A stretch of 64,000 nucleotides of DNA, taken from assembly GCF_001194135.2 (NCBI RefSeq), contig NC_068982.1, positions 93,426,885 through 93,490,884 on the forward strand. The letters run 5' to 3'. Source of the stretch: Octopus bimaculoides. Its lineage: Eukaryota. The translations under genes and the position numbers were made by a program. A model generated the notes under the pieces. That model ran no database searches. It was given only the letters and a program-made list of their open reading frames with translations, and was not told the origin of the DNA. Position 1 is the first letter of the stretch. The number at the start of each line of letters is the position of its first letter. Of this stretch, positions 19,030 to 42,755 are shown in pieces.

Positions 19030-19460
19030 CCTCCCCTGGCTCTCCGGGCTCCGAATTAATATATTGACTGAACTCGACTCCTACCCCCACCCCAAACACC
19101 TTATAAAGCCCTGCTGACAAGACCACCTGCATATAGCATATATATATTGGTTTTTTTTTTAAAGTAAGTTTCGATGGGATGGTAATTTGTTCCAACCATT
19201 TAGTGCATCTTGAATTTAAATACAGGATTAGATTTGAAACTGATTTTCTTTCTGTCATCTGACACTTAACTATACAACACTTGCCTGCGATAGTGAGCCT
19301 AACATCCAACTCCGAGGCGAACTTACTCTTCCAGCTCGGACTTGTGAAAGTCAATATGATCGAACTTCTCACATCCTTTTACTGTTTATGCATAGAAAGT
19401 ATGAAAAGTGGTCGAATTTCTCCAGTGGCGTCTCCGAGATGGTAATGTTGAGGTCTGGAG
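19030..19460 (-). mobile_element. RTE LINE, 3' part (continuation of 21167-22480)
   Basis: TPDLN|ITISETPLEKFDHFSY continues in frame across the 15-bp TSD TGTTGAGGTCTGGAG. Confidence 0.8.
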
Positions 19461-19502
19461 AAGACGGCGAGCTGGCACGCCGGTCGAACTGCTTCGCGGT
19501 AT

Positions 19503-20999
19503 AACGGCTCTGTGAATTATTGTGAATACTGTTGTGTTACTTTGTGAAAACTGTCTCGGTAAATAATTGTGATTTTTGTGGAATTATTACGGTTACGTTT
19601 CACGTGAGCTGCTGCATTTTTTCCCAGCTATGGCAAGTGGTAGTGTCTCCAGTATGGAGAGCTACNNNNNNNNNNNNNNNNNNNNNNNNNNNNNNNNNNN
19701 NNNNNNNNNNNNNNNNNNNNNNNNNNNNNNNNNNNNNNNNNNNNNNNNNNNNNNNNNNNNNNNNNNNNNNNNNNNNNNNNNNNNNNNNNNNNNNNNNNNN
19801 NNNNNNNNNNNNNNNNNNNNNNNNNNNNNNNNNNNNNNNNNNNNNNNNNNNNNNNNNNNNNNNNNNNNNNNNNNNNNNNNNNNNNNNNNNNNNNNNNNNN
19901 NNNNNNNNNNNNNNNNNNNNNNNNNNNNNNNNNNNNNNNNNNNNNNNNNNNNNNNNNNNNNNNNNNNNNNNNNNNNNNNNNNNNNNNNNNNNNNNNNNNN
20001 NNNNNNNNNNNNNNNNNNNNNNNNNNNNNNNNNNNNNNNNNNNNNNNNNNNNNNNNNNNNNNNNNNNNNNNNNNNNNNNNNNNNNNNNNNNNNNNNNNNN
20101 NNNNNNNNNNNNNNNNNNNNNNNNNNNNNNNNNNNNNNNNNNNNNNNNNNNNNNNNNNNNNNNNNNNNNNNNNNNNNNNNNNNNNNNNNNNNNGAAGACC
20201 AAATGCCCCCTATATGAGTTCACACAGCCACAGCAAGAGAAAGCACAAGCAGAGGAGGAAAGAACTATAGACCACACTGAGGAAATAAAAGAGAGACAGA
20301 AGTGTGAAACAGAGAAAACAAAGGAGAAGAACGAAAATGGAGCTACTAACCCTAAAAAGCGAAAGAAAATAAGTCAAAGGAACGGTCAACAGAAAACAAA
20401 AAAAAAAAAAGAGATAAAAAAGCCAGAAACTAATAATGTACAAGAAGAGGAGGAGAGAACGGATAAAGATGTGAAATACAAGGGGGTTTTGATAAAGTAC
20501 GAGAATCGCGAGCAGATGGGGAGAAGAGTCGAGAGGTTGGGAGAAATAATAAGAGTGAAGATGCCAGAGAAATGTGCTGAAAAATGCATTTTGATATCTG
20601 AGGAAAGCTGCTGGGAGTGCATAAAAGAACTTGGTGAAAATATAATAACGAAACGGATATGGTTGGTGGAGACACCACCCCCTAGAACTGATTATTTGCA
20701 GTTGTTAAAGACGGACGTAACAATGATTAATGGAAGAAAGGTAACGCGAGCGTTTGAATTTTTTGAGCTACAAAACCGTTAAAATGTTTACATGACGTTG
20801 AACGTAAAAATGAAAAACTGGATAAATGTAACCACCCGACTTCGGGGATCGAGTGGACATTGCGCCTCATTTTTTTCATTCTTGCATATCATCATTTTAT
20901 TTTAATTATCCCGATTTTATGTTTGCGTTTTGTACTGTCTTTATGTTTTGTGATGTCTTAAAAATGTTTTGTATAGCCCTTTATGGGTAATAAAGAAAT
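19503..20999 (+). mobile_element. ORF1/gag-only retroposon copy B inserted in a SINE
   Basis: CGGTAT duplicated at 19497-19502 and 21000-21005; both ends match copies C and D; ends GCCCTTTATGGGTAATAAAGAAAT; N gap 19666-20193. Confidence 0.9.
19630..20782 (+). CDS. Gag/ORF1-like CCHC zinc-knuckle protein of element B (middle hidden by N gap)
   Basis: ATG at 19630 (MASGSVSSMESY); after the gap 195 open codons from KTKCP to ELQNR*; intactness across the gap cannot be tested. Confidence 0.5.
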
Positions 21000-21166
21000 C
21001 GGTATTTCGCCTGTCTTTACGTTCTGAGTTCAAATTCCGCCGAGGTCGACTTTGCCTGTCATCCTTTCGGGGTCGATAAAGTAAGTACCAGTTGCGTACT
21101 GGGGTCGATCTAATCGACTGGCCCTCTCCCAAAAAATTTCGAGCCTTGTGCCTAAAGTAGAAAAAC

Positions 21167-22480
21167 TGTTGAGGTCTGGAGTTTCCTGACTTAGAACGGG
21201 TTGTACCAGGAGTTTTGTCTTTTTGATGTTGACTTTTAGGCCTAACCGAGTGTAAGCATTGGTGAAGTTATTCACCGATTGTTGAAGCTGTTCACTGGAG
21301 TGGCAGGCTGCTGCGTTGTTATCAGCATACTGAAGTTCAGTGATCTTTTGCTTCCTGGTCAGTCTTCGTGACTTTAATCTGATATGGTTGAAACATCCCC
21401 CGTCATATCGGTACTAAATGTTGACTCCTAAATTGTCCGAAGGCAATTCATGAAATTTTGCTGCAAGGTACAGGGGAGAAGAACGTCGGAGCCAAAACGC
21501 ATCCTTGTTTTAATCCTCCAGTGATGGGGAAGTCTTCAGACAGTTAGTTTTGATGGAAGCTGGTTCCAGTCATACCGTTATGTAATCCCTGTACTAGGGA
21601 AATGAACTGATCGGGACAGCCGAAGCGTCAGAAGACCTTCCACGTTGCAGGCCTTGAGACGGTATCAAAGGCCTTTTCGAGGTCGTAGAAAACAAAATAG
21701 AGAGGTTTTTGTTGTTCTCATTTCTTGTATTTGTCGAGCACAAAAGATCATGTCAGTTGACCCTCTAATGGTCGAAATTGACATTGTGATTTGGGTAGGA
21801 CTTCCTCCGCGATGACTTGGAGACGATCCATAAGGAGTCTTGCAAAGATTTTCCCCGCGGTGGAGAGCAGTGGGATGCCACAATAGTTCCCACAGATCTT
21901 TCTGTCTCCTTTGAGTTCTTTGGAAACATGGCGGTTCTTCCACATTCAGAGAATCAATGAACAAACTGGTGTTTAATAGTACTCCACTGGAATGTTGCTT
22001 AGGCCAAGGGATTTCCACTACTTCATGCGGTTGAGGGCAATCTGGTACTCTTCGTAGGATGGTGGCGTGTTCATCCAGTGTTGAGTTGGATGCATGGCTA
22101 CGTTCTTCAAGAAGTCTTTCGCAGCGTTGAAGCCTTTGTTCAGAAGACTCGAGAAGTGCTCTCTCCAACAACTGCAGCCAGGAGCCTTAAGCCCTATTCA
22201 AACGGCTAAGCTGCTGGAGACTGGTCAATCTTTGGTTGGTGAGGGTTGCTGCTGAAAAGCCAAACGTGTAGCAGCAATCTTCGGCTCTTTGCCACCTCCG
22301 GAAAGATCCAGAAACGAGTGTCAGAATTTCTACGACTTCCACAACCTCAAAACCTAGCCTCCAAATTTCTCCGATTGTAAGCCCATAGATTAGAATATAT
22401 GGGGCGTGGTTGAGAAAAAAAAACAACCGCTTTGCCTGCAATGCCAAAGCTGAGCTGGTAGCCAAGATCAACGAGATGTT
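21167..22480 (-). mobile_element. RTE LINE RT region, decayed
   Basis: KGDRKICGNYCGIPLLSTAGKIFAR, STDMIFCARQIQE, ITELQYADN, LGLKVNIKKTK. Confidence 0.9.
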
Positions 22481-24795
22481 CGAAGATCTTCCCAGAGCTA
22501 TATTGAGGCCTAGTGGAAGCTGAGAGCGGCTTCTTTGAGTAAACTGTTATCTCCCAGCCATAAACTAGTTGGTATTTTTTGAATTTTAAAACACTTTTAT
22601 ATTTGAATGAGCTATTGTTTTCTTTTCCTTTTATGCAATATGTCCAATTTAATCCAAACACCCTGTATCTGTTCTTGGGTGGTAGACTTAAACAAGTCGT
22701 TCGATTCTCACCACCGCTACTAGGCAATTGGGATTATTCTGTTGCAACAATTTGGTTAAGGTCTTCTGTGTGAAGATTACAGCAACAATCCATAATTCGC
22801 TGTTCCTTCTCTATTATCAGCAACCTTGCAAAGAAAAAATAAATGAAAAAGATTGTAAGGGCCTCTCTTCCTCCATTGGCAAAACCAAAAATCAAAGTTT
22901 CGTACAACGAATTCAAATCAAATGGTTTTTTATGTGTTGTGACAGAATGTAAACTAATTACACCAATAGTATTTAGTAATGTAACTGAAATTAGTGGGTT
23001 TCAGGTGTGCTTCAGTCTCAAACTACGTTTTACCTGTACACTTAACCGTTTTAGTCAACTCACTTAAATCTTAAAAGAATTCTAGGAAATTAGTTGTTGC
23101 CAACACCAGCAAAAATGAATTCAATAAATCTAGTACGGCTTGACGAGTTAGATTTTCTTTGTACTACTTACAACGCAGTTGCATTTTTATTGTTCGGGTT
23201 TTTCTTTTTAATAGTAAATTTCTAGTTGAACAGTCGTGATAACAAAGAATCTGCTAGGCTTTGCTGAAGAAACTTCATTTTTCTGTTTTACTAAAATTAC
23301 ACCGACTTAAAAGTTCCTAAATCTGTGCAAATTCTCCGAAATGAGTGACGTTTTTAAAACGTCTCGCAAATCCGAACTCCAGCAGATAAACGATACAAGT
23401 CAAATTTTTAAGGAAGGTCATGCGAATAGATTTTAAAGAGGGGTTTTAATACTGTTTTCTCTATTAACTTTTGATTGATAGTTTAACTGAAAGTGTAGTA
23501 CCATTCAAAAGGCTGTTGGTGACTACATCCGGCCTAGCTAAGGAAAACGTAAAGGCTAGAAAAATTATATATTTACTCTGTGTTTCTCCTTAATAACTTT
23601 TGGCAAAATGTCTGACTTCAAAGCGGAAAATGATATGATTTCACCATGGCTATCAGTAAGCATAGCTGTAGACAAGGAGGGGCCAGGGGTGGCTTAGCCA
23701 CCCTTGAAAAGTGTGCATCCCCCTAGGATTTATATCTATAATGTATTGGATAATAAATATGTATATTAAAACAATTATAAAAAAAAAGTATGATCCCCCT
23801 CTATGATCTTATCTTGCCCTACCACGAGTATATCGTCTAGTAACCAATCTGAAAGACAGACAACACATTTTCCTTTTCTAATGATCCTTTTGTAATGATG
23901 CTAGTAGAAAACTAACTAATATTCATTTAACGCGTATTCAGCTTTCTCTCTTGTATTTACTATTTTCTTTTTAATGAATGTAAGCCATGTTGATGCTAAA
24001 GCCGTATCATTTATGTTTAAAATCTGTTTCCTCCAGATACACACACACACACACACACAAAAGAATAAGTGTTGGTTGGACAGAAAATACTATGAATGGA
24101 TATACAAAGAAAAACAGCCACCATTGAAGATAATACAAGAGATGAAAGGCGTCTACACTACTTTCATTCATAATAGAAACATTTCTCGGATGATAATCGC
24201 CGTGAAGTACCAGACTAGCCGTAAATTAAATTTTCTGAATTATACATCTTATAGAAATTCGTCTGAGTTAGGAATATTAGCAAATGTTAACAATAGATAT
24301 TAAAATACAGAAACTTTTCGTTAGATAAAGTATTGATTTCGAGACTAGGTTCAGAGAAAATTCCCTGTGTGTTATAGTAATGGACACTCTTCATCTCTTC
24401 TCTCGATGTCGCAATTCATCCAGTATCTTATAGTATCATTCCCTTCCTATGTACGGAAAAAAAAAAGCTAATGAATTTCGGAGTCTCTGGCTCACAACAA
24501 TCACTCTTCTCTCCATCTTTTTGCCATTCCCGGTGACATACTATTGAATTAGTTAGTTATACACAAATACTTATTTAGTCATTTATCATATTAGCTACGA
24601 ATGTTGGTTTCCGCTTTGCCTATAGAATAAATCTAGTATTCCTTATTCTTATATCACAGTTGGAATATTGCTCCCCTCTGTGACCACCCTGTACGAGAGA
24701 GAGAGAGATATTTAGAAATCGATCATAGACTATTGAGGAAAATAGGCAGCAATCCATGTCTCAATTACGGTGATGAAATCAATCAGTTTATCATT

Positions 24796-26109
24796 GTCAA
24801 CAAGAAATGTGTGACTGTTTCTCGTAATTTTCCAAGTTAATCTTCAAGTTGTTATAACGGTTAGTCACTTTGTTGATTCTGGTTTTTCTATTGTTATTAA
24901 CTGTTGTGTGTCTTAAGGTCCTTGTTTTGCTGCCCTACGGCAGTTATGTTGAGGCTCTCCCCTTTGTTTAAAGGGGGAAGCACAGTCGGGGAAAAATGGA
25001 ATATGACAATTTGATTTCTTTGGAATTCACAACGTCCGAGGAGGAATTGCTGAGAGCAATTTCTGTGGCGGACAAAAAAGAAGAAAAAGTTAATTTTGCG
25101 GCCTTGGCCAAAATTCACAAAGAAATAAAGGTCAATATGGAGGAATTTGGAAAATACAAGAATATGCTATGTAGGGAGGGGCAGGACGTGAAGGTCACTC
25201 CTCAAGGTTAGAGTGGAGGGCAGGATCCCTCACTGTTACAAATGTGGCCAAAAATTCCACATTAGAGCGGAATGTCCTCCACCACCCGTAAAAACACCAG
25301 AGATACCCGATAATGGAAAAGAAACTGCACCTCCACCGCCGGCGAGAACCAGTGGGGGAGAACTCAGCACCGAGGAAGAAGGTGAAAACAAAGAAAAAGA
25401 CCAAAGACGGATGGGAAACAGCAGGAAAGAGAAAAAAAGCACAATCTGTTAAGGATGACCCCTCTCATCCCACACCCACCCGACTCCCGCCTAGACCCAC
25501 TCTGCCCCACCCTTCCCCTGAAAACACCAACCCTCACCCTACTCCACCTGACATTGATAAACTAGACACAGACACACAAGAGCCCCAATTTTCCAACCTT
25601 CACCCCTTTAAAAAAAAAAAAGAATTGTGCTTCACAATGCGTCACATGCTAAGCTATGTAAGGAAGCAAACAGTTGGGACGAACTGATAAAGGTAAACAT
25701 TATAGAATGTAGGAAGGTATCCTTGCACTTTGTGTAATAGCGGACCCTAAAAGCACATCAAGACTAAAAGAATACAGGAACAATGTTTTTTTACTGGGAA
25801 AAGAAAAATGACACCAGGGGAATACCAATAACAGTAAATTTCCACGAACTTCTTAGAGATCTTAATAGACATTTTATGTACTGAATAGATGTTAAAAGTT
25901 TTTTTAAATAAGTAATTTATCGTTTTAACAAGTATAAATAAAATCGCTCGGATGTGGAGTCAAATGGCTTCATTTCATTTTTCCTTTTCATTATTCAATT
26001 CATCCTTTTTGATTCGTTTTTTTTATTTTTTATCCCCACCTTTGTGTTTTTGTCTGTCCTTGTACTGTCCCCTCTGTGTTTGGCCCTTTGTGGGCAATAA
26101 AGAAATAGA
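24796..26109 (+). mobile_element. ORF1/gag-only retroposon copy E (internally deleted)
   Basis: VEGRIPHCYKCGQKFHIRAEC knuckle; tail TGTCTGTCCTTGTACTGTCCCCTCTGTGTTTGGCCCTTTGTGGGCAATAAAGAAAT; possible TSD AATCAGTTT(A)TCATT at 24781 and 26110. Confidence 0.75.
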
Positions 26110-27220
26110 AATCAGTTTTCATTTCTATAAAACTGTCGCGAACGTTTCATTCATTCCAGTAAAATAAAGTAAATATAGACATATAACACATCTAACATTA
26201 TTCTCTGACTTAATCAAAGAGCAGCGGCCATGACCTTTTTCGGGACTTCCGAGACTTGTGGGTGTTTGAGTAGTTTATCCTCAAACTGGAAGCTTGAGCC
26301 GTTATTTGCAACAGAGTAGACTGACAACTATGAATGACTAAAGGGATTTTTACGCCCCTTTACAATTGCACCAAGGGGGAACACCTGTTTATGGTTTCTG
26401 CTTTATAAAGTAGATCGGGTTTAACATAGAATTTTGTCATGGTTTAGCACTTTCAACTGTAATATCACATCAATCGACTCTTTCCGACAAAAAAAAAAAA
26501 AATTACTGACCTTATGGAAAGCATCCTTTTATTTATAAAGCTACAAACCTATGCTAAATTGTATTCAACATTTATTATTGTGAACCTGATAGATTCTATA
26601 CAAAAGTAAATTTATCAAAGTATGTTTGTGGTCCAGATGCTTATTGCTAGTTTCATGAATTATCTTCCCAAAATCAACAAATGCATTTCAATTACATGAT
26701 CTTACGTCGCGGATGTGTAGTAGACAACTATATGAACTAACAGTAGATAAGATACAAATTTTATAGAAGAAATATCAGCCAGAGCTAATAGTATATTTCC
26801 GTTAATGAGGGTAATAGCTAATCATTCAGGCCCTCTTTTCTATACATTTAATTTGTGGCATTCTGCTTTCACTCTATTTAAGACAGGATTTGAAATTCAG
26901 AGTGCATGAGTAGGTTAAAAAAAAAGTCGAAATATTGAATGGCCTCAATTAAAAAAAAAGTAAAATTTGTTTTGCATGCAGAAAGTGTTCTCTAATGCAA
27001 TCTGAAATTACTATTCTTCTCATTAATTAAGAGAGTTTGTGCTATGTGAGTTAGATTGTCTGCGATACGAATTACACCGGTTCATAAAATTTTGTCATCA
27101 AATGGACATTCTGTATTTGATGTCACATAAGCCGTCAGACGCTTCAGATTCGTTGGGTCCCAGTACTGTAGCGATCAGTTGCATGCACTATAGCCATTGG
27201 AATGAAGTTATAAAAATCCT

Positions 27221-28942
27221 CCTTATTTAATTTATCAATTAGGATTGCTGTTAAGTACTTGTTTGTTTGTTTTACTATTGTAGGTTTTCCCTTTTGGGAT
27301 TACCTTTGGTGACTCAACTGTTTTTGTGTCGTTTTTTTGACACATTGCCTGCTTCGACAGGTTTGTTTTTATATTTGTTTCCCCCCGTTCAGGGGCGAGC
27401 AGTTTTGTGTGAAAAGTTTTGTTTGACACAATATGGAAGTGACGGACTTCCCTTATGTGTGTCCGACTACTTAAGAGTTGGACGAACTGTGTAAACCCTT
27501 TAGTGAGGATGAAGCTGAAGTACAGTGTCAGCGTATCAGAAAGCATACAAGAAGACAGGGAGACAACCAGTAACGCGGCTGAAGCCTTTGGTGAGACGCA
27601 TAACATCAGCTCAGACAGAGTCAGAAAGTTTGAGTCAATTCTACAGACAGAGGGATTAAATATGAAGCTGACTCCACTTTGAGAAGTGATGGAAGACGAA
27701 AAAAAGAAAACCATCATTTATAGGACACTGTCTATGAAAACGAAGAGGACAGAGATGGCATCCAGGGATGCCATCGAAGAATGCCTAAAACCAATATGGA
27801 GTAGAATTGAGTACATTAACAAAGGGAGGAGGTTTGGCACGGTAGCGATACGAATCACCTCAGAGTAGGAAGCGAAAGAACACTCAGTAATAACCTTACA
27901 GTCGGCAGAGCTAATGCTGCTGCCGTCTTATCTCGGGAAAAGAACGGCTAAAACCGCCATCGAAGGAATTCCACCAGAAATTCAGACGGAGTTGCTGATA
28001 CCAGCCGTATTTGTTAATATAAAGGAGGATGTAACCATCCTCGAAGCTTTCGAAAAGGGTAAACAGAACCGGTGCGGTAAAAGTCTAAGCCTAATAATTC
28101 AGGCCACTACAAACGATCTGGAAGAAATGCCAGAATTTGTTGTATTACTATACGGCACTAAATTAAAGATAATGGTTCAAGGAAGAAGACTAAGGTGCTT
28201 CAGGTGCAGTCTAAAAGGGACACATTAAGGTAACGTACCCCTGGACCTGCAACCTGAAGTACACCCAGCTACAAACAACCTAGCACAGCCAGAAGGAGGA
28301 AAAGGAAACCCGCACATCGTAGACAAACAATATGAAGAGAGGACACGGACCTCTGTGTCTAACTCTATAACAGAAAAACAAGAAGACCACATTAGGGGAG
28401 CCGTTGGAAAAAAAAAAGTACTCAGAAAGAGACACCAAAAAATTTACCATCAACCTCAAATGAGGTGAGTAACGAAGATTGTACTATGGTTAGGAGGAAA
28501 AAGAAAACGAAAGATACCCTCCCTCAAACAAATACTTCAAACATACAAAAACCAGCATCCACAACATTCACACACTCATCCTACTCGAAGCAAAACTCCG
28601 CACTCACACAATTTACACACGAGACACAAAAATCGTACTCCTTTTTTTTTTTTTTTTCCCAACAGAACTAATTACAATCCACTCACTCAGGACATCACAC
28701 TACCTGCTTCACCCAGAAAACTACTTTGGCCACATACAGAAATTCATATATCAACCCTTCCACAGCTGAACACATAACGTGTTCAAAATTATTGCATGAT
28801 TCTTACATTAATTGTTACCCCTTTTCGAACTGTGATTGATATACTTTTGAAAATTACTTGTTATTCCAAGTAATTCAATTGGAACTCTTTGTCATCCCAT
28901 GTTGATGGAAGCGAGTTTATATTTGGGAGAAGAAAAAAAAAA
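27221..28942 (+). mobile_element. ORF1/gag-only retroposon copy F (full length, decayed)
   Basis: YINKGRRFGTV..LLPSYLGKRTAK..IPPEI..VQGRRLRCFRC; A-rich tail; TSD TTATAAAAATCCT at 27208-27220 and 28943-28955. Confidence 0.8.
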
Positions 28943-29359
28943 TTATAAAAATCCTTCCCTTCAGCTCCACTTCCATTTTGTTCTATGGAGTCATTACAGT
29001 TCTCAGTTTCTTTTTTTTTTTTTTTTCATAGTTTGATTACATTTCTCAGCTTGTCTTTTTTTGATCCCCAATTTCTCTCCATATTTTCAATAACGCCTAA
29101 CTCCCGTTCGGTTGCACAGTTTATATTTTGATTGGCATATTCAATTACTTTCAACTTGTTTTACATCATATGAACTTCATTTTCCTTTCTGCTTAAAGAA
29201 TATAACAGGAAATTGTTATAGTCGTTTGTTAGTATAATACTACTGTGTGACGGTTTTCCTGAATCTGTAATTCTTGTAGAAGCTAATAATTCTTTCTTGA
29301 AATTTATGGTCCACAGACAAGAAAGAACAATATCACAATATACATATTGATTTCAAATT

Positions 29360-29565
29360 TTCGCACAAGGTCAACAATCCTAGGGGAGTGGGTAAGTCGA
29401 TTAAATCGACCCCAGTGTTCAACTGATACTTATTTTATCGATCCCGAAAGGATGAAAGGTAAAGTCAACTTCAGTGGAATTTTAATTTAGAACGTAGTGA
29501 CGGACGAAATGCCGCTAAGCATTTTGCCCGGCGTGGTAACGATTCTGCGTGCCCGCCGCCTTAAT
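29360..29565 (-). mobile_element. tRNA-derived SINE (GGCGAG-head family), full length
   Basis: Head, hairpin region, B box and body all recognisable. Confidence 0.85.
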
Positions 29566-31559
29566 CACAATACACATATCAATTTCCATTTATTCATTTG
29601 AGGTAGTTTTTAAGGTAGTGTGTCAGATATGTGTGTCGGTGGGTTGGTGTTAGTCAAATGCACGTGCTATACGATCAATAAGCGATAAAATAAAATAAAA
29701 AATACACTGCTCGAAATACAACAGTACTTCCGCCAGCAATTTGTAATGATAATAATGGATAATATAAAAAAAAAAAATGACATTGTTAACTGCAAGTATG
29801 TCACCAGTACTCGCTGTTGCTAGGTAGATCTGCTTAGTTAATATAGTGTGGATCAATGCTTTTGCTAGCTTATGATCGGTTCTTGGTGACGTCGATAGTT
29901 GGGAAGTGATTTGGTGCAACAATTGGTCATAGAATTTATTAGATACTAGTCTGGTGAGCAGGCTGATTATCATGCCATTTCCACCGGCTCTCTTCTGTTT
30001 GAATCTAATATACCTGCGAATTGAGTTTCTTTGTAATTATGCCATAAATTTATTTCGTTTACTTCGATAATCCTTAACAAATATTACTCGTCCAATATAT
30101 TTATCGGAACTTTTGGTGTGTTTGTCCTTCTTTGAATAAGTTTTTTCGTCAAATATGACAATCTTTCGTGGTTGTCGGTCATGCCGTATTTCTGCCGATG
30201 ATTTTCCATCGCATCGTACGATGAGAGAGAAAAAAAAAAAACAACAACAACAATATTAGAATAAATGCTTACCTGTCCAACATATGAACGATTTTCATGG
30301 CAACCTTTTCGGATGCATTATTTGAAAGCTTGGAACATGCGACATCAAATACCGTATGTCCATTTGATTACCTAATTTAGATTAAGTACAATTATTTCTG
30401 CCATGCGTGATACAGTGAGAATTATCGGAGTATTAGGTCAATATATATATATATATATAATCTGATACTTAAACGAGAGTAAAATGTCGTGCCCAGTATG
30501 TTAATATGTTGCTAATGTACCTGATAGAAATATTACTGAATGATCCAAAATAATCTGGACTATATCAAATACACCATACCATTTTACGACAAAATGTGGA
30601 TTATTGTCATTGGCTCGTTCTGGAAATTTCGATATTTATATATATANNNNNNNNNNNNNNNNNNNNNNNNNNNNNNNNNNNNNNNNNNNNNNNNNNNNNN
30701 NNNNNNNNNNNNNNNNNNNNNNNNNNNNNNNNNNNNNNNNNNNNNNNNNNNNNNNNNNNNNNNNNNNNNNNNNNNNNNNNNNNNNNNNNNNNNNNNNNNN
30801 NNNNNNNNNNNNNNNNNNNNNNNNNNNNNNNNNNNNNNNNNNNNNNNNNNNNNNNNNNNNNATATATATATTTCACTGGACCATGCCGCAATGACCTTCA
30901 TGCAGTTGAATTTACATTTTTCTTATTTTTTAAGAGCGGTTATCCAAGAAAATTTGAATACGAAATTAATAAATCCCATGATTATTTAGTGCATTACGTT
31001 TTTCCAACTCTTATATGCTCGTCTTCAGTATTTAGTTTTCCCGGCCAACCCTTACTAACTGATTGTTTAATGTCAGGAATAATACTGAAATGAACATTTG
31101 TTACTGATTTCTTGATATGATTTTTTTTTTTTTTAAGTTACAAATTCAACTTCAATTTCGTTTTTGATTCCCTTACAACATCCGTTCGAATGATTGTCAG
31201 ACCGACACAAATTTGGAATTATAATTTCCATTTGTTGCTATGTATGCATTCGCTATACGACCAAAATTCTCCACATCGATTACATTTTTTTTTCATCCTT
31301 CTATAAACAAACTTTCTTTTCGTGTTGAATATAACATTTAAGACAGCTTTTTCATACATTTTGTTATATTTTTGCTTGTATAACAAGTAATTTTAGATAT
31401 TTAAAAAAATCTAATTAGATAAAATTATTAAAAAATATCGTTAATGTCGTTTGTCACTGAGGTTGAACCATTAAGTAATAGCTCGGTTTCCTTAGCACGA
31501 ATTTAGTGACTTAATGTATTACTCACTGATGGCTTCTCGTCACGTCAATCAATCATATA

Positions 31560-31700
31560 GTGCTGAAGGCGTGTGGCCTTGAGATTAGTGTTACACTGAC
31601 GATTGCATGATCGTGGTTTCGATTCCCTGACAATGCGTTGTGTTCTTGAGCAAAGCACTTCATTTCACTTTGCTCTGGATCACTTAGCTGTAACTCCTAC
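31560..31700 (+). mobile_element. Degraded tRNA-derived SINE with CORE/V-like segment
   Basis: GGTTTCGATTCCC B box followed by GTTGTGTTCTTGAGCAAAGCACTT. Confidence 0.55.
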
Positions 31701-32394
31701 GACTGACTAGCATTGCGTTCACGGGATACGTGATCTCGATCAATTATACGCCATGGAAACCAGGTAACTGGCCCCTGTGAGTCCTAGGATTCGAGACCAT
31801 AATATCCAGGGGTCGATGATGATGACGATTGATTTGTACTCATTATACATTTGGTGAAATTTATTCAAGTCAGTCAAAATACGCTTGTGTGTGTGTGTGT
31901 GTGCGTGCGAGTGTTTATTCGGTCAGTTTTTCAGTAATTATTTTGTCTTACTTTTTGGGACCGACTACTTAATTTATTAAGATATCCGTTTCATAACTAA
32001 TCCCCAGCCATAAATACGAATTTCTGCTTGTCTCCAACGTTGTACGCTTTCAAATCTGCATTCAAACGTTGGAGATAAATTTTCCTTTTATCACGATTAC
32101 GGTCGAATTGCTGAAGAATGGAAACACAAGTGACTGATATATTTGTGTTAAGTTGATAATCTACAATTGTTTTCTGGAATATAGAAAACGTTTCTATTTT
32201 TTGTTGTTGCTGTATATCTGTTTGTGGTGACTGAATTTCTTTCGTTTGATGGTGTATTAACATTTGCGAGACAGTTGTCTCAATGAATAACTTTTTGCCT
32301 AGACTTTCGAAATAGCATTGTAAAAAAGTCCAAAAAATTATGACAAAGAAATAAAAATACTGGTAGCAAGTCGTGATGATAATAATAATAATAA

Positions 32395-32770
32395 CCTTTT
32401 CTATAATAGGCACAAGGCCTCAAGTTTTGAGGAAGAGGACTAGTCGATTATACTGGTACTTAATCTATCGACCCCGAAGGGATGAAAGGCGTAGTCGACC
32501 TTAGCGGAATTTGAACTCAAAACGTGAAGACGGAGGAAATACTATCAAGCATTTTGCTTGGCGTGCTAACGATTTTGCCAGCTCACCGCTTTAATAATAA
32601 TAATCCTTTCTATTATAGGCACAAGGCCTGAAATTGGCGGTGCGGGGACTAGACGAGTACATCGACCCCAGTGTTTCACTTGTACTTATTTTATCGACCC
32701 CGAAAGGGTGAAAAGCAAAGTCGACCTCGGCGGAATTTGATCTCAGAAGTTAACTGTAGACGAAATACTT
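32395..32770 (-). mobile_element. Two tandem SINEs; the right one is the 3' half of the SINE interrupted by elements C and D
   Basis: Full copy ~32395-32592, (TAA)n, then 32600-32770 breaking at AAGTAT|TTCGTC. Confidence 0.85.
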
Positions 32771-34434
32771 ATTTCTTTATTACCCCAAAAAGGCTATACA
32801 AAGAATTTTTAAGATATCACAAAACATAAAGACGGTACAAAACGCAACAAACATAAATCGGGGAACTAAAAATTACAAAATCGAATGATAATAGAAGAAA
32901 AATTAAAATAAAATGATAATATGCAAGAATGAATAAATGAGGCACAATGTCCACTCAACCCCCGAAGTCGGGTGGTTACATTTATCTAGTTTTTCACTTT
33001 CACGTTCAACATCATGTAGACATTTTAGCGGTTTTGCAACTCAAAAAATTGAAATACTCGCGTTACCTTTCTCCCATTAACCACTGTTACTTCCGTCCTT
33101 ATCAATTGCAAATAATCAGTTCTAGTGGGTGGTGTCTCCACCAACCATATCCGTTTCGTTTTATATTTTCACTAAGTTCTTTTATGTACTCTCAGTAGTT
33201 TTCCTCGTTTATCAAAATGCATTCCCCAGCACGTTTCTCCGGCGTCTTCACTCTTACTATTTCCTCCGACTTCGCGAATTTTCTCTCCATCTGCACGCTC
33301 TTCTCGTACTTTATAAAACAAAACCCTTGTATTTTACATCTTTATCCGTTCTATCCTCCTCTTCTTGTGCATTATTAGTTTCTGGCTTTTCTATCTCTTT
33401 TTTGTTTTCTGTTGACCGTTCCTTTGACTTATTTTCTTTCGCTTTTTAGGGTTAGTAGCTCCATTTTCGTTCTTCTCCTTTGTTTTCTCTGTTTCACACT
33501 TCTGTCTCTCTTTCGTTTCCTCAGTGTGGTCTACAATGTTTTCCTCCTCTGCATGTGCTTTCTCTTGCTGTGGCTGTGTGAACTCATATAGGGGTCATTT
33601 GGTCTTCATATGATCTCTTTCTCCGCATATGTATCAATTTGGTTTCCTTCTCTCGACTACAACATTTAACGTTCTCTCATTCTCCACTTCTATCTGGTAT
33701 GGAATTCTTTCTATGTCCTCGAATGTGACAAAAAGCCACATTTCGAGTCCAAATCCCCACCATTTGCGCACTTTCAATTCCGCCACTGGTCCCAATTCCG
33801 GCTCCTCCTTGGTTGCACTCAGTACTGTTGCAACCAACCATTCCGGTTTAATCTCTGGTGGCACTCTGGGAATACGTATTTTCACACTTCTTCTTCCTCT
33901 ATAACTTGGTAGTAATGCTATTTTTGTATTTCTTAAAATGTTGGACGCATGCTTGGTTGCCTCTTCTATAGTGGCGAAACTCACCTCAACCGTACCGAAC
34001 TTTCTTCCTCTGCTGATGTACGTGGCTTCATTCACAATTTCACCCAGGCACTCCTAGATTTCCTATTCCGTCACCATTTGAATTTTAGAGGTTTCGACAG
34101 CCTGTGTACGATACACAACTGTCCTCAGAATTTTTTTTTCTTTAGTCTCTTTTGGGGGACACAATTTGTATGAGTCTCCCTCAACTTCCTGCTTCTGGTC
34201 ACCTCCTCCATATCCAACTTGATTAACTTGGTTTTCAGTGTCCCTGGTGTAGCTCTCCATACTGGAGACCCTTATCACTCGCCACAGCTGGAGGAAAGAA
34301 AACAAAAAAAAACAGCGGTTCGCGTGAAACGTAACAACAATAATTTCACAATTATTCACAGAGACAACTTACAGTAATTCACACAGTTTTCACAGAGTAA
34401 CGCAGCAGTTTTCACAATAATTCACAGAGACGTT
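32771..34434 (-). mobile_element. ORF1/gag-only retroposon copy C (full length, no gap, stops in ORF)
   Basis: 1664 bp from AACGTCTCTGTGAA to GGGGTAATAAAGAAAT; YISRGRKFGTVEV..LLPSYRGRR..VPPEI..RKPN; no RT. Confidence 0.9.
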
Positions 34435-34440
34435 ATACCG

Positions 34441-36022
34441 ATTTCTTTATTACCCATAAAGGGCTATACAAAGAATTTATTAAGACATCACAAAACATAA
34501 AGACAGTACAAAACGCAAACATAAAATCGGGGTCATTAAAATAAAATGATAATATGCAAGAATGAAAAAAAAATGAGGCGCAATGTCCACTCGATCCCCG
34601 AAGTCGGGTGGTTACAGTTATCCAGTTTTTCACTTTTACGTTCAACGTCATGTAAACATTTTAACGGTTTTGTAACTCACAAAATTNNNNNNNNNNGAAG
34701 TCGGGTGGTTACAGTTATCCAGTTTTTCACTTTTACGTTCAACGTCATGTAAACATTTTAACGGTTTTGTAACTCACAAAATTCAAACACTCGCGTTACC
34801 TTTCTTCCATTAATCATTGTTACTTCCGTCCTTAACAACTGCAAATAATCAGTTCTAGGGGGTGGTGTCTCCACCAACCATACCCGTTTCGTTTTATATT
34901 TTCACCAAGTTCTTTTATGTACTCCCAGGAGTTTCTCTCTTGTATTAAAATGCATTTCTCAGCACATTTCTCTGGTATTTTCACTGTTAATGTTCCCTCC
35001 AACTTCTCGACTTTTCTCTCCATCTGCTCGCAATTCTCATACTTTATCAAAAACCCCTTGTATTTCACATCTTTATCCGTTCTCTCCTCCTCTTCTTGTA
35101 CATTATTAGTTTCTGACTTTTCTATCTCTTTTATGTTTTCTGTTGACCGTTCCTTTGACTTATTTTTCTTTCGTTTTTTAGGGTTAGTAGCTCCATTTTC
35201 GATCTTCTCCTTTGTTTTCTCTGTTTCACACTTCTGTCTCTTTCATTTCCTCAGTGTGGTCTACAATGTTTTCCTCCTCTTCTTGTGCTTTCTCTTGCTG
35301 TGGCTGTGTGAACTCATATAGGGGTCATTTGGTCTTCATATGATCTCTTTCTCCGCATATGTAGCAATTTGGTTTCCTTCCCTCGACTACAACATTTAAC
35401 GTTTTCTCGTCCTCCACTTNNNNNNNNNNNNNNNNNNNNNNNNNNNNNNNNNNNNNNNNNNNNNNNNNNNNNNNNNNNNNNNNNNNNNNNNNNNNNNNNN
35501 NNNNNNNNNNNNNNNNNNNNNNNNNNNNNNNNNNNNNNNNNNNNNNNNNNNNNNNNNNNNNNNNNNNNNNNNNNNNNNNNNNNNNNNNNNNNNNNNNNNN
35601 NNNNNNNNNNNNNNNNNNNNNNNNNNNNNNNNNNNNNNNNNNNNNNNNNNNNNNNNNNNNNNNNNNNNNNNNNNNNNNNNNNNNNNNNNNNNNNNNNNNN
35701 NNNNNNNNTTTTTTCTTCTTTAGTCTCTTTTGGGGGACACAATTTGTATGAGTCTCCCTCAACTTCTATCAAATTCCTGCTTCTGGTCACCTTCTCCGTA
35801 TCCAACTTGATTAACTTGGTTTCTAGCGGCACTGGCTTCCTCACCGCAGTGGCCTTGGTGTAGCTCTCCATACTGGAGACACTACCACTTGCCATAGCTG
35901 GGGAAAAAATGCAGCAGCTCTGTGAAACGTAACCGTAATAATTCCACAAAAATCACAATTATTTACCGAGACAGTTTTCACAAAGTAACACAACCGTATT
36001 CACAATAATTCACAGAGACGTT
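34441..36022 (-). mobile_element. ORF1/gag-only retroposon copy D (tandem with C)
   Basis: Separated from C by CGGTAT (34435-34440); VEGRKPNCYICGERDHMKTK; N gap 35420-35708. Confidence 0.9.
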
Positions 36023-36075
36023 ATACCGCTAAGCGGTTCGACTGGCGTGCTAACGATTCTGCCAGCTCGCCACTT
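36023..36075 (-). mobile_element. SINE head preceding element D
   Basis: On -, GTGGCGAGCTGGCAGAATCGTTAGCACGCCAGTCGAACCGCTTAGCGGTAT. Confidence 0.9.
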
Positions 36076-36149
36076 TAATTTATCCGTCTACCTATCTATG
36101 CTATAATGGAGATAGCTGCTTATTAATTAGGTATTATATGTTCTAAAAA

Positions 36150-37700
36150 ATTTCTTTCTTTATTGCCCACAAGGGGCCAATGAAGAGGGGACAATACAAG
36201 ACATGTGGGACATATAACATATGAAGGTGAATGATATGGCTTTGTACAAATAAAGATGAGACGGTCACTCCGGCCCCACTCCGGGATAGTTACGTTTTTA
36301 CAATTAATTCAAAATGTTTCTATAATTTTTCGTTTTTTTCTTTTTCTTTTAAAGCGTTCATTGTTCATTCAGTTTTTCCTAAAAGTTAATTCTCAATAAT
36401 TTTTTTTACTTACTACTTGATGTCTTTCTTTATCTAGTCATATTCTACCACTGGGGTGCGGGGTTCATTTCTCACCCTCGACCCCAGTGGATTCACATTT
36501 GATGGAAATGCTTCTTTTAGTGTTTTATATTTTTCTTCATTTATCAAAATACACCTCGTGTCTTTATCATAACCTTCTGGTGAGTTTATTTTTGTAATAC
36601 GTTTCATTTTTGTAATCTTTCTTTCAATTTTTTGGTTTGTGCAATGTGTTACTAATTATATCCTGTTTCTCTATGTGTTCTCACCCTGTTGTGCATTTTG
36701 TGTGTGTCTACGTCTCTGTGTTTACTTGGTGATTCCGTGCTGCTAGTGATGTTTTTCCTTTTTTTTTTTTTTCGGTGAACCTATGGGCTGCTTGTTTTAA
36801 TGGGTATGTTTCTTCCTGTGATTTATGTTTCATTTGCTGTAGTTCCTACTTGGGTGGTGTATTTCTCCTCTCTCTCTATTTCTTGTTCCTACGTTTGTAA
36901 ACTATGTGTCCTGTTCTTCGTCTCGGGATTTTTGCTCTAATTCCATTGCGCATTCTTGTGCTTCGATCTCTGGAACCTCCTTCACTTGTTGGGGACACCT
37001 TTTTTTATGTGTCCCCTCTCCCCGCAAGAAAAGCAGGTACGGAGCCTTCCATCCAATATTACTTCCAATTTTACCTCATTTAGTAGTTCTAGTATCTCCG
37101 GTATTCCAACATATTCTGTTTGATTGACTCGAAAAAACATCTCCAGCCCGTAACCCCACGAATTTATTTCTTGGGTCCGGGTTATCTGGAGGATGCTAAT
37201 GCTTTCATTTCCTTCTTCGTCTCCCACGTCAAAGATTGCCGCTATCAGCCACTCGGGTTCTATTTCAGGCGGAATTCTGCCTACCCTAACTCTTGTCCAG
37301 GTATGTAGGCAGGAGGGTTCACTCGTCCGAATGTAACGGCACAGCGGAGTACTTTTTGGAGGCGAAAGTGACCACCACCGTGCCGTACCTTCTACTTCTT
37401 GTGTAAAAGGTAATAACGTCTTTAATCTCCTCTAGGCATTTTCCTACCTCTTCCTGTGCTGCCATATCCACTTTTCTCTTGCTTCTCGAGAACGTTCTGT
37501 ATATAATCTCTTTTTTTTTCCCCCCCCATTTCTTTCAATTCTTCTTCTGTTGGGGTCAAGTTTATGTTAGACCCTTCTTTCTGTATCCTTTCTTGGTATT
37601 TTTGTATGAGCACGTCTTTGAAATCTACTTCATATTACTTCAGCAAAGTTGGGTCATGTTTGAACTTGTAGTGAAACCTCTATCGGGCATTCAATCATAA
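36150..37700 (-). mobile_element. ORF1/gag-only retroposon copy G (decayed)
   Basis: WGYGLEM..ILDGRLRTCFSCGERGHIKK; tail GTCCCCTCTTCATTGGCCCCTTGTGGGCAATAAGAAAGAAA. Confidence 0.8.
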
Positions 37701-42539: not shown

Positions 42540-42755
42540 AAGGTGGTGAGCTGGCAGAAGGGTTAGCACGCTGGGTGAAATGCTTAACGGTATTTCGTCT
42601 GTCTTTACGCTCTGAGTTCAAATTCCGCTGAGGTCGACTTTGCCTTTCATCCTTTCAGAGTCGATAAATTAAGTACCAGTTGTGTACTGGGGTCGATCTA
42701 ATTGACTAGACCCTGCCCCAAAACTTCAGGCTTTGTGTCTAAAGTAGAAAAGAAT
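42540..42755 (+). mobile_element. tRNA-derived SINE (GGCGAG-head family), uninterrupted
   Basis: Full head, TTAACGGTATTTCGTC target site, B box and tail; shows the empty-site sequence. Confidence 0.9.

What the first reader, a model, noticed from the sequence alone, without database searches (positions are those of the whole stretch)
19461..36075. Site-specific retroposon that inserts at one nucleotide inside a tRNA-derived SINE
Seen: copies B (19503-20999, +), C (32771-34434, -) and D (34441-36022, -) all begin right after ..GCTT(A/C)GCGGTAT of the SINE head. B and C resume at (C/A)(G/A)GTAT-TTCG of the SINE body, so a 6-bp CGGTAT is duplicated. Uninterrupted SINEs (e.g. 42540-42755) show the empty site. 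The site lies on the 3' side of an 8-bp hairpin (CGAAATGC-TTAGCG-GTATTTCG) between the Pol III A box (TGGCAGAATCG) and B box (GTTCAAATTCC). The SINE bodies after B and after C differ (AGTTGCGTACTGGGG vs AGTGAAACACTGGGG), which favours independent events. Known: Tx1-clade LINEs are often sequence-specific (Xenopus Tx1L targets a DNA transposon; Keno targets U2 snRNA; Dewa targets tRNA arrays). Inference: a parasite of a SINE that uses an abundant safe-harbour target and separates the SINE's A and B boxes by ~1.5 kb. I do not know of a description of this system, but I cannot search.
Basis: partly seen in the sequence, partly recalled or inferred. Interest (0 to 1): 0.9.

Follow-up and report, generated by a model that had tools for sequence, protein, structure and literature searches.

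The report
Octopus retroposon that targets a SINE
A 1.6-kb octopus mobile element that carries only an RNA-binding gene and no copying enzyme was found five times, always at the same nucleotide of a common short repeat (SINE), so it is a site-specific "parasite of a parasite": a new case of a known phenomenon.

Summary
The window (Octopus bimaculoides-like DNA) has three copies of a ~1.66-kb element. All lie in the head of an abundant SINE, after ...GCGGTAT, and are followed by CGGTAT-TTCG.

C does not follow a SINE head. D and C are a head-to-tail tandem in one SINE, with a single CGGTAT between them.

Two more copies, on two O. bimaculoides chromosomes, have the same junctions. That makes 5 of 5 copies in 4 unrelated loci, in SINEs of different subfamilies. 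D is closer to copies at other loci than to its tandem partner C, which favours repeated insertion at one site.

The element is not a full LINE. It has one ORF (tandem RRM folds plus a CCHC knuckle), no endonuclease and no reverse transcriptase.

Its ORF is homologous to ORF1 of an APE+RT+zf-RVT LINE in O. sinensis. Its last ~30 nt match the 3' tail of that LINE, of other octopus retroposons and of the SINEs.

Best reading: a non-autonomous, ORF1-only, target-specific non-LTR retroposon mobilised in trans. Membership of the Tx1 clade is untested, and the source of the specificity is unknown.

This is a new variant of a known kind; Tx1 elements that target other transposons are known.

The parts
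19447..19460 (+). Outer 14-bp duplication GTTGAGGTCTGGAG of the host SINE at locus B; the second copy is at 21168-21181
   Evidence: Read directly. It flanks the whole SINE-plus-B unit.
19461..19502 (+). SINE head at locus B. It has lost about 12 nt including most of the A box, and ends in CGGTAT (19497-19502).
19503..20999 (+). Element copy B. ORF 19630-20782. The assembly gap 19666-20193 replaces about 640 bp. The C-terminal 195 codons are open.
21000..21167 (+). Rest of the host SINE at locus B, starting with the second CGGTAT (21000-21005); contains the B box GTTCAAATTCC
36023..36080 (-). SINE head at locus C/D, with A box TGGCAGAATCG, ending in CGGTAT (36028-36023)
34441..36022 (-). Element copy D, the upstream member of the tandem. 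Gaps at 35420-35708 and 34687-34696. An 87-bp block is duplicated by the assembly.
34435..34440 (-). Single CGGTAT between D and C: a target-site duplication sandwiched in the tandem
   Evidence: read in gap-free sequence
32771..34434 (-). Element copy C, 1,664 bp, complete and gap-free. The 5' UTR has three ~33-nt repeats. The decayed ORF runs about 34287-33025. The 3' end is GGGGTAATAAAGAAAT.
32604..32770 (-). Rest of the host SINE at locus C/D, starting with AAGTAT (a decayed CGGTAT, 32770-32765). It belongs to a different SINE subfamily from locus B.
42540..42755 (+). Uninterrupted SINE showing the empty target GCTTAACGGTAT|TTCG
43503..43985 (-). K: a 5'-truncated LINE copy (C-terminus of ORF2, 43-45% aa identity to the O. 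sinensis LINE in L002) ending in the same tail module (GTGGTTAATAAAGAAAGAA). It is not at the SINE site.
25201..26106 (+). G: a divergent ORF1-like retroposon ending in GTGGGCAATAAAGAAAT. It shares the tail and is not at the SINE site.
36155..37507 (-). I: a divergent ORF1-like retroposon ending in GTGGGCAATAAAGAAAGAAA, about 75 bp upstream of the occupied SINE and not at the SINE site

Best explanation
The element is a non-autonomous, ORF1-only, non-LTR retroposon of about 1.66 kb. It inserts in one orientation at one nucleotide of the head of an abundant octopus SINE: ...GCTTAGCGGTAT^TTCG..., with CGGTAT duplicated.

Shown:
- The structure is a 5' UTR with short repeats, one ORF of about 430 aa, and a ~240-nt 3' UTR. 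The 3' UTR ends in AATAAAGAAAT with no poly(A).
- The ORF has two RRM folds, a CCHC knuckle, a K/E-rich linker and a family-specific C-terminal ~100 aa.
- There are no terminal inverted repeats, no RT and no endonuclease.
- The ORF is homologous to ORF1 of an APE+RT+zf-RVT LINE.
- The terminal ~30 nt is the tail module shared with that LINE, with other ORF1-only retroposons and with the SINEs.

Inferred:
- The element is transcribed by Pol II from its own 5' UTR or by read-through.
- Its RNA is bound by its own ORF1-like protein and copied by target-primed reverse transcription. An ORF2 protein supplied in trans by a LINE of that lineage would recognise the shared tail.
- The bottom strand is nicked 5' of CGGTAT and the top strand 6 nt further on, giving a fixed 6-bp duplication.
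- A second insertion into the half-site kept by an occupied SINE gives tandems with one CGGTAT in between.

The source of the specificity is open. Option (a) is a dedicated, still unseen autonomous relative with a sequence-specific endonuclease, as in Tx1-Mar and SINEU-3. Option (b) is pairing of SINE sequence carried on the ends of read-through transcripts with the target SINE, as proposed for R2 and R1. For (b), note that the AATAAA signal lies only 5 nt before the element's end, so cleavage would fall in the SINE flank.

The insertion separates the SINE's A and B boxes. It should therefore silence that SINE copy while landing in selectively neutral DNA.
For: Site specificity:
- 5 of 5 copies in about 126 kb of sequence lie at the same site and in the same orientation. 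They are B, C and D, E in L001 on CM046603.1 and the copy in L009 on CM046624.1. No copy or fragment lies anywhere else.
- L001 and L009 were retrieved through annotated proteins, without regard to their flanks.
- As a rough estimate, a random insertion would hit one given SINE nucleotide and orientation about 1 time in 10,000 or less.

Independence of the events:
- The flanks of the B, C/D and E loci share no collinear similarity. The L009 locus lies on a different chromosome from E (its flanks were not compared).
- The host SINE bodies carry different subfamily markers, which are also seen in empty SINEs: GTTGCGTAC, GTGAAACAC, and GTTATGCAC with a different tail.
- JC distances are D-B 0.064, D-E 0.071 and D-C 0.095, so the tandem partners are not sisters.
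- Tandem copies 'sandwiching a TSD' are described for target-specific SINEU-3 (PMC4494074).

Nature of the element:
- CCHC knuckle.
- AlphaFold model with pLDDT 90 whose best PDB matches are tandem-RRM proteins.
- 484 relatives at E<=1e-3. All those with a named source are octopods.
- ORF1 homologues lie directly upstream of APE/RT ORF2 in L010 and L002.
- The RT of L002 is closest to human L1 ORF2p, E = 3e-18.
- The tail module is shared, including with a 5'-truncated LINE in the window.
- There are no terminal inverted repeats.

Recent activity:
- The ORFs of E and B are largely open.
- E is annotated as gene LOC128247323.
Against: - Only 5 copies at 4 loci could be examined, and no genome-wide census was possible.
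- No autonomous partner with this target was found.
- The two RT-bearing relatives seen (L002 and K), and the tail-sharing elements G and I, are not at the SINE site. Trans-mobilisation by that lineage does not by itself explain the specificity.
- No 5'-truncated copy was seen; all four readable 5' ends are full length. That is unusual for LINE-type elements, though normal for short ones.
- There is no microhomology between the element's 3' end and the priming strand unless the RNA carries flanking SINE sequence.
- B and D share two rare variants in the SINE head next to the junction (TCGAAC for GCGAAAT). B and E share one (GCTTCG for GCTTAG). None of about 12 empty SINEs has either. Some flank therefore travels with the element, which also fits gene conversion or a composite unit.
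Confidence: 0.7

Rival explanations
1. Composite retroposon. One ancient insertion into a SINE created a unit of SINE head, cargo and SINE tail. That unit then retrotransposed as a whole to random sites using the SINE's own 3' tail. The constant position in the SINE would then be inherited rather than targeted.
For: - The whole SINE-plus-B unit is flanked by its own 14-bp duplication, as a composite would be.
- B/D and B/E share rare variants in the SINE head next to the junction that about 12 empty SINEs lack.
- The SINE tail is itself a LINE-type tail.
Against: - The SINE parts downstream of B, C, E and the L009 copy belong to different SINE subfamilies. Their multi-nucleotide markers are also found in empty SINEs, and E's SINE has a different tail type.
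- The D-CGGTAT-C tandem, whose members differ by 9.5% while D is closer to B and E, needs a second insertion at the same site.
- The element keeps its own LINE-type tail, which a composite would not need.
Confidence: 0.1
2. Ectopic gene conversion or homologous recombination. A single insertion was copied from one SINE copy to others using the SINE sequence on both sides as homology, without new retrotransposition.
For: - SINEs are very abundant and often clustered, which gives ample homology.
- All copies are full length with identical junctions.
- The shared head variants next to the junction look like short co-converted tracts.
Against: - Homology arms of about 50 bp (head) and about 165 bp (tail) at 75-88% identity are poor substrates for transferring a 1.6-kb heterology between chromosomes.
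- The tail-side flanks show no shared variants.
- The tandem with one 6-bp repeat between diverged members is not a conversion product.
- The ORF and the LINE-type tail are conserved as in an active retroposon.
Confidence: 0.1
3. Segmental duplication of one occupied SINE.
For: B, C and D lie within 17 kb of each other.
Against: - The 5-kb flanks of the B, C/D and E loci show no collinear similarity.
- The copies lie on at least two chromosomes.
- The host SINEs differ in subfamily.
Confidence: 0.01
4. A cut-and-paste DNA transposon that targets small-RNA-like sequence, as the Dada superfamily does (6-7-bp duplications in snRNA and tRNA genes).
For: A fixed 6-bp duplication at a defined site in a sequence with tRNA-type promoter boxes, with precise ends in every copy.
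Against: - There are no terminal inverted repeats and no transposase.
- The only ORF is a LINE ORF1 homologue.
- The 3' end carries AATAAA and a LINE/SINE tail module.
Confidence: 0.02

Closest known systems
Tx1-clade target-specific LINEs and their non-autonomous partners: Tx1L in the piggyBac element Tx1D; Tx1-Mar and SINEU-3 in Mariner-N4_AMi; other Tx1 families in LTR and Harbinger elements (Kojima 2015, PMC4494074)
   Same: - A non-LTR retroposon nested at one defined site of another transposon.
- A fixed target-site duplication.
- Tandem copies that sandwich one duplication.
- A non-autonomous element showing the specificity.
- The related LINE has an APE-type ORF2, and ORF1 carries a CCHC knuckle.
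   Different: - The target here is a SINE, and the host is a cephalopod.
- The element keeps an ORF1 but no ORF2.
- No autonomous partner with this target was found.
- The RT-bearing relatives that were seen insert elsewhere.
- Clade membership could not be tested.
HAL1 (half-L1) of mammals: non-autonomous LINE derivatives that encode only ORF1 (from my own knowledge)
   Same: ORF1-only architecture with a LINE-type 3' end. The missing ORF2 protein is presumed to be supplied in trans.
   Different: - HAL1 is not site-specific.
- Its ORF1 is the coiled-coil/RRM/CTD type, not tandem RRM plus CCHC.
- It ends in poly(A).
R2 and R1 elements of rDNA
   Same: - Strict site specificity in a multicopy target.
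- No poly(A) tail is needed.
- Co-transcribed target sequence is proposed to help precise 3' and 5' joining (cited in PMC4494074). That mechanism could explain the shared head variants and the position of AATAAA here.
   Different: R2 and R1 are autonomous and encode their own sequence-specific endonuclease. Their target is an essential gene family, not a SINE.
Dada DNA transposons (from my own knowledge)
   Same: A 6-7-bp duplication at a fixed site in small-RNA genes.
   Different: Dada has terminal inverted repeats and a DDE transposase. This element has neither, and it has LINE ORF1 and tail features.

Membership tests
Target-specific non-LTR retroposon (general) | Independent copies at the same nucleotide and in the same orientation of a repeated target | tested here: met
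   5 of 5 copies at 4 loci; the flanks of three loci were compared and are unrelated, and the L009 locus is on another chromosome; host SINEs are of different subfamilies
Target-specific non-LTR retroposon (general) | Fixed target-site duplication, and tandem copies separated by one duplication | tested here: met
   CGGTAT (TGGTAT or AAGTAT where decayed) lies on both sides. D-CGGTAT-C is a tandem whose members are 9.5% apart.
Target-specific non-LTR retroposon (general) | Encodes its own reverse transcriptase and endonuclease (autonomous) | tested here: not met
   The complete 1,664-bp copy C has one ORF1-like ORF only. Pfam finds only zf-CCHC. The element is therefore non-autonomous.
Tx1 clade of LINEs | The RT groups with Tx1 in a phylogeny | not testable with these tools
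   The element has no RT. The RT of the related O. sinensis LINE matches human L1 ORF2p best among solved structures. No Tx1 reference was on hand, and the database names were uninformative.
Tx1 clade of LINEs | APE-type endonuclease in ORF2, and ORF1 with RRM and CCHC (type I ORF1p, from my own knowledge) | tested here: inconclusive
   The ORF1 type is met. APE, RT and zf-RVT are present in the relatives L002 and L010 but not in the element. These features are shared with L1-clade elements.
ORF1-only non-autonomous LINE derivative (HAL1-like) | Keeps a LINE ORF1 and a LINE 3' end and lacks ORF2 | tested here: met
   33% aa identity over 215 residues to ORF1 of the L002 LINE. The ~30-nt tail module is shared with L002 and K. 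There is no ORF2.
Classical SINE | Short (under about 600 bp), non-coding, with an internal Pol III promoter | tested here: not met
   The element is 1.66 kb, coding, has T-runs early in the 5' UTR and has no A or B box of its own.
Dada-type DNA transposon | Terminal inverted repeats and a DDE transposase | tested here: not met
   No terminal inverted repeats and no transposase domain.
tRNA-derived SINE (the target) | Head recognisable as a tRNA | tested here: inconclusive
   A-box-like TGGCAGAATCG and B-box-like GTTCAAATTCC are present. ARAGORN and Rfam find no tRNA. Octopus tRNA-derived SINEs are on record (Ohshima and Okada 1994, cited in PMC4758252).

The most novel reading that the evidence does not exclude
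The specificity is supplied by the non-autonomous element itself and not by an endonuclease. An ORF1-only retroposon would borrow a LINE ORF2 protein that inserts at other sites and redirect it to one nucleotide of a SINE. It could do this through SINE sequence carried on the ends of its read-through transcripts. Alternatively, it could use the family-specific C-terminal domain of its ORF1-like protein. That would be a hitch-hiker imposing its own address on borrowed integration machinery.
Probability: 0.15. Interest if true: 0.8.

Novelty: new variant of a known kind. Interest (0 to 1): 0.5.

Why it matters
Site-specific non-LTR elements are the natural models for programmable, RNA-templated gene insertion (R2, R1, Tx1).

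This case adds three things:
- a SINE as the target, so that one dependant of a LINE lands inside another dependant of the same LINE lineage and splits its Pol III promoter;
- an element that has strict specificity yet encodes neither endonuclease nor RT;
- a cephalopod host, in a genome where SINEs and LINEs are very abundant and much discussed.

If the specificity proves to come from the RNA or from the ORF1-like protein, the system would separate target choice from the enzyme. If a dedicated autonomous partner exists, this is one more target-specific lineage. It would also be a useful marker for SINE age and for annotating nested repeats in octopus genomes.

Tried and rejected
- **Metagenome scan** for the element's 24-nt 3' end: two hits, both unrelated sequence. 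That collection does not hold the element.
- **The look-up of encoding contigs** for P0001 and P0002: nothing on record. Only P0005 and P0162 gave O. bimaculoides loci.
- **Protein searches**: only 10 close relatives, all from O. bimaculoides, so no cross-species comparison of insertion sites was possible.
- **Logan contigs L003-L008**: a distant ORF1-like transcript of another species, with no DNA similarity.
- **Rfam** on the window and on the element: no tRNA, no ribozyme at the 5' end, nothing else.
- **ARAGORN**: no tRNA.
- **PDB sequence search** with the ORF profile: knuckle-only noise.
- **Pfam on 10 long window ORFs**, looking for an RT: only a piggyBac-like transposase fragment.
- **tblastn of the L002 ORF2** against 126 kb of O. 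bimaculoides DNA: only the 5'-truncated copy K, so no autonomous partner is at hand.
- **Names of RT homologues**: uninformative for clade assignment.
- **AlphaFold on the C-terminal domain**: pLDDT 58, not usable.

Rejected: segmental duplication and a Dada-like DNA transposon. A tRNA intron or group-II-like insert was also rejected, because there is no RNA-family hit and the ORF is a LINE ORF1.


Full report
**1. What is in the sequence**

The window is AT-rich animal DNA with 11 assembly gaps. Every close protein relative of the element's ORF comes from Octopus bimaculoides, so the window is from that species or a very close relative.

BLAST of the gap-free copy C against the window finds exactly three copies and no other fragment:
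- B, 19503-20999 (+)
- C, 34434-32771 (-)
- D, 36022-34441 (-)

The 216-bp SINE at 42540-42755 has about a dozen relatives in the window.

At locus B the order is as follows:
- SINE head ending in GCTTCGCGGTAT (19461-19502)
- element B
- CGGTATTTCG..., running through the B box to the SINE tail (21000-21167)

At the second locus, read on the minus strand, the order is as follows:
- SINE head ending in GCTTAGCGGTAT (36080-36023)
- D
- one CGGTAT (34440-34435)
- C
- AAGTATTTCG... and the rest of the SINE (32770-32604)
- a second complete SINE (32587-32396)

One point is wrong: C does not follow a SINE head. D and C are a head-to-tail tandem in a single SINE with one 6-bp repeat between them.

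**2. Assembly gaps**

- The 528-N gap in B replaces about 640 bp of the element. The 289-N gap in D replaces about 440 bp.
- The 10-N gap in D is flanked by an identical 87-bp block on both sides, which is an assembly artefact.
- Continuity and reading frame across the gaps in B and D cannot be known.
- All junctions, and the whole of C, lie in gap-free sequence.

**3. Is it more than chance, and are the events independent?**

The 24-nt 5' end occurs 3 times against 0.00 expected. The 3' motif TGGGYAATAAAGAAA occurs 6 times against 0.05 expected.

Two further copies were retrieved through annotated proteins, without regard to their flanks:
- **E**, in L001 (chromosome record CM046603.1). Its junctions are GCTTCGTGGTAT|AACGGCTCTG... 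and ...AAAGAAAT|CGGTATTTCG.
- **A copy in L009** (CM046624.1). Its 3' junction is ...CAAAGAAAT|CGGTATTTCG. Its 5' end is lost in a gap.

That makes five of five copies in about 126 kb at the same nucleotide and in the same orientation.

- The 5-kb flanks of the loci share only short dispersed repeats.
- The host SINEs carry different subfamily markers, which also occur in empty SINEs. The bodies read GTTGCGTAC, GTGAAACAC or GTTATGCAC, and E's SINE has a different tail.
- Perfect empty sites exist, for example GCTTAGCGGTATTTCG at about L001 36584-36370 (-).
- On the shared 3' 800 bp, JC distances are B-E 0.052, B-D 0.064, D-E 0.071, C-D 0.095 and C-B 0.103. The L009 copy is 0.16-0.19 from all the others.
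- D is therefore closer to copies at other loci than to its tandem neighbour C. The tandem reflects two insertions into one SINE, not a local duplication.
- Tandem copies 'sandwiching a TSD' are described for the target-specific SINEU-3 (PMC4494074).

**4. What the element is**

C is 1,664 bp.
- It has a ~170-nt 5' UTR with three ~33-nt direct repeats and no terminal inverted repeats.
- It has one ORF of about 430 codons. The ORF is decayed in C and largely open in B and E.
- It has a ~240-nt 3' UTR ending in AATAAAGAAAT with no poly(A).

Pfam sees only a CCHC knuckle.

A profile of the N-terminal 240 residues finds 484 relatives at E<=1e-3. All those with a named source are octopods: O. bimaculoides, O. 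sinensis, O. vulgaris and Argonauta hians. None of ten long hits carries an RT or endonuclease domain.

An AlphaFold model built on 40 of these sequences is confident (pLDDT 90.4). Its best PDB matches are tandem-RRM proteins: Hsh49, U2AF65 RRM1-2, IMP3 RRM1-2 and hnRNP A1 UP1. The protein is therefore RRM-RRM-CCHC, followed by a K/E-rich linker and about 100 residues found only in this family. A model of that last part was too poor to use (pLDDT 58).

**5. Link to LINEs**

- In a marine metagenome contig (L010), a homologous ORF is followed directly by an ORF2 with an APE endonuclease and the start of an RT.
- In O. sinensis (L002), an ORF1 with 33% identity over 215 residues to the element's ORF is followed by a frameshifted ORF2. 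That ORF2 has APE, a YADD RT and a zf-RVT domain.
- Its RT is closest to human L1 ORF2p among solved structures (3e-18, against 7.5e-13 for R2).
- This LINE ends in ...TGTCCCTTTATGTTTTCTAAT...CAGCCCTTGTGGCCAATAAAAAGAAT followed by (ATT)n.
- The element ends in ...TGTCTTTATGTTTTGTGAT...TAGCCCTTTATGGGTAATAAAGAAAT (47 of 81 aligned positions identical, with the terminal ~30 nt clearly alike).

The same module ends several other sequences:
- three other sequences in the window: G at 26106, I at 36155 and K at 43503;
- a SINE variant (L001 11050-11110);
- the ordinary SINE tail, in looser form.

K is a 5'-truncated ORF2 C-terminus of this LINE lineage. The window also holds five very divergent ORF1-like copies, F to J.

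The element is therefore one family among many ORF1-bearing, ORF2-less retroposons. They share a tail with an L1/Tx1-group LINE and with the SINEs.

**6. How it most likely works**

Shown: structure, homology, shared tail, precise junctions, the 6-bp duplication, and repeated use of one site.

Inferred: the RNA is copied by target-primed reverse transcription by an ORF2 protein supplied in trans that recognises the shared tail. The bottom strand is nicked 5' of CGGTAT and the top strand 6 nt downstream.

The source of the specificity is not settled, because the tail-sharing relatives seen here (G, I, K and the L002 LINE) lie at other sites. There are two options.

- **(a) A dedicated autonomous relative** with a sequence-specific endonuclease exists but was not within reach. 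Precedents are Tx1-Mar with SINEU-3, and the rule that the endonuclease sets the target (PMC4494074).
- **(b) The element's transcripts carry SINE sequence at their ends, which pairs with the target.**
  - AATAAA lies 5 nt before the element's end, so cleavage would fall in the SINE flank.
  - The priming strand ends in ...ACCG-3', which can pair only with a read-through CGGU.
  - B and D share two rare variants in the head next to the junction, and B and E share one. About 12 empty SINEs have none of them.
  - The numbers are small, and the same pattern would also fit gene conversion or a composite unit.

**7. Rivals**

- **Composite unit (SINE plus cargo moving as a whole).** It is favoured by the outer 14-bp duplication around SINE-plus-B and by the shared head variants. 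It is contradicted by the different SINE subfamilies downstream of each copy and by the tandem.
- **Ectopic gene conversion.** It fits the full-length copies but not the tandem, the conserved ORF and tail, or the short diverged homology arms.
- **Segmental duplication.** Refuted.
- **Dada-like DNA transposon.** Refuted.

**8. Comparison and novelty**

Target-specific non-LTR elements that nest in other transposons are well known. So are non-autonomous partners that share the specificity, and tandem arrays. Examples are Tx1L in Tx1D, Tx1-Mar and SINEU-3 in a Mariner, and other Tx1 families in LTR and Harbinger elements (PMC4494074).

L1-Tx1 families are reported as recently active in O. vulgaris (PMC13282606).

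I found no description of a retroposon that targets a SINE, or of this element. I checked the papers searched and the two recent octopus repeat papers. Repbase and Dfam could not be consulted.

Membership of the Tx1 clade is untested. What is new is the target (a SINE head), the ORF1-only non-autonomous architecture combined with strict specificity, and the host.

Verdict: a real feature and a new variant of a known kind, of moderate interest. It would be of higher interest if the specificity proves to be independent of the endonuclease.

Noticed in passing
window 5777-6374 (+), 25201-26106 (+), 27605-28441 (+), 37507-36155 (-), 39634-38983 (-): Five further, very divergent (30-37% aa) ORF1-like (RRM+CCHC) copies. 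At least G and I end about 0.9 kb after the knuckle in the shared tail. ORF2-less, ORF1-bearing retroposons therefore seem to be a diverse and abundant class in this genome.
   Followed up: partly
window 43503-43985 (-): A 5'-truncated LINE copy (ORF2 C-terminus, 43-45% aa to the O. sinensis LINE in L002) with the tail GTGGTTAATAAAGAAAGAA. This shows that an RT-bearing lineage with this tail exists in the same genome.
   Followed up: partly
L001 11050-11110; window SINE tails, e.g. 42725-42755: One SINE variant carries a faithful copy of the LINE tail (GTCCCCTCTATGTTTAGCCCATTGTGGGCAATAAAGAAAT). The ordinary SINE tail (GGCCTTGTGCCTAnAGTAGAAAAGAAT) looks like a looser relative. The SINEs and the ORF1-only elements probably depend on the same LINE lineage.
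   Followed up: partly
window 19447-19460 and 21168-21181: The host SINE of copy B is flanked by a 14-bp duplication, GTTGAGGTCTGGAG. The SINE at 42540 has one of about 15 bp. These are much longer than the element's fixed 6 bp.
   Followed up: no
window 19476-19502, 36049-36023; L001 9564-9590: The SINE heads next to copies B and D share TCGAAC (consensus GCGAAAT). Those next to B and E share GCTTCG (consensus GCTTAG). About 12 empty SINEs have neither. This is a possible co-transfer of 5' flank with the element.
   Followed up: partly
window 34600-34686 and 34697-34783: An identical 87-bp block lies on both sides of the 10-N gap inside copy D. This is an assembly artefact, not biology.
   Followed up: yes
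window 49558-50178 (+): An ORF fragment with a piggyBac-type transposase domain (DDE_Tnp_1_7, E = 6.5e-15).
   Followed up: no
window ~17500-19400 and 21200-23000 (-): A run of open stretches on the minus strand on both sides of the SINE-plus-B unit. None of the four tested has a Pfam match. The SINE may sit inside another unclassified element.
   Followed up: partly
L002 3720-3775 and 9345-9375: The O. sinensis LINE (ORF1 + APE + RT + zf-RVT) is flanked by (ATT)n on both sides. It either targets that microsatellite or ends in it. Many SINE copies also end in ATTATTATT.
   Followed up: no
L001 35984-36786; window 32396-32770: SINEs often lie head to tail in clusters: four in a row in L001 and two in the window.
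   Followed up: no
L010 3-995, 1886-4471, 4482-6158: A marine metagenome contig carries the end of one LINE ORF2 (zf-RVT) followed by ORF1 and ORF2 of the next. That is a head-to-tail LINE tandem in an unidentified eukaryote.
   Followed up: no
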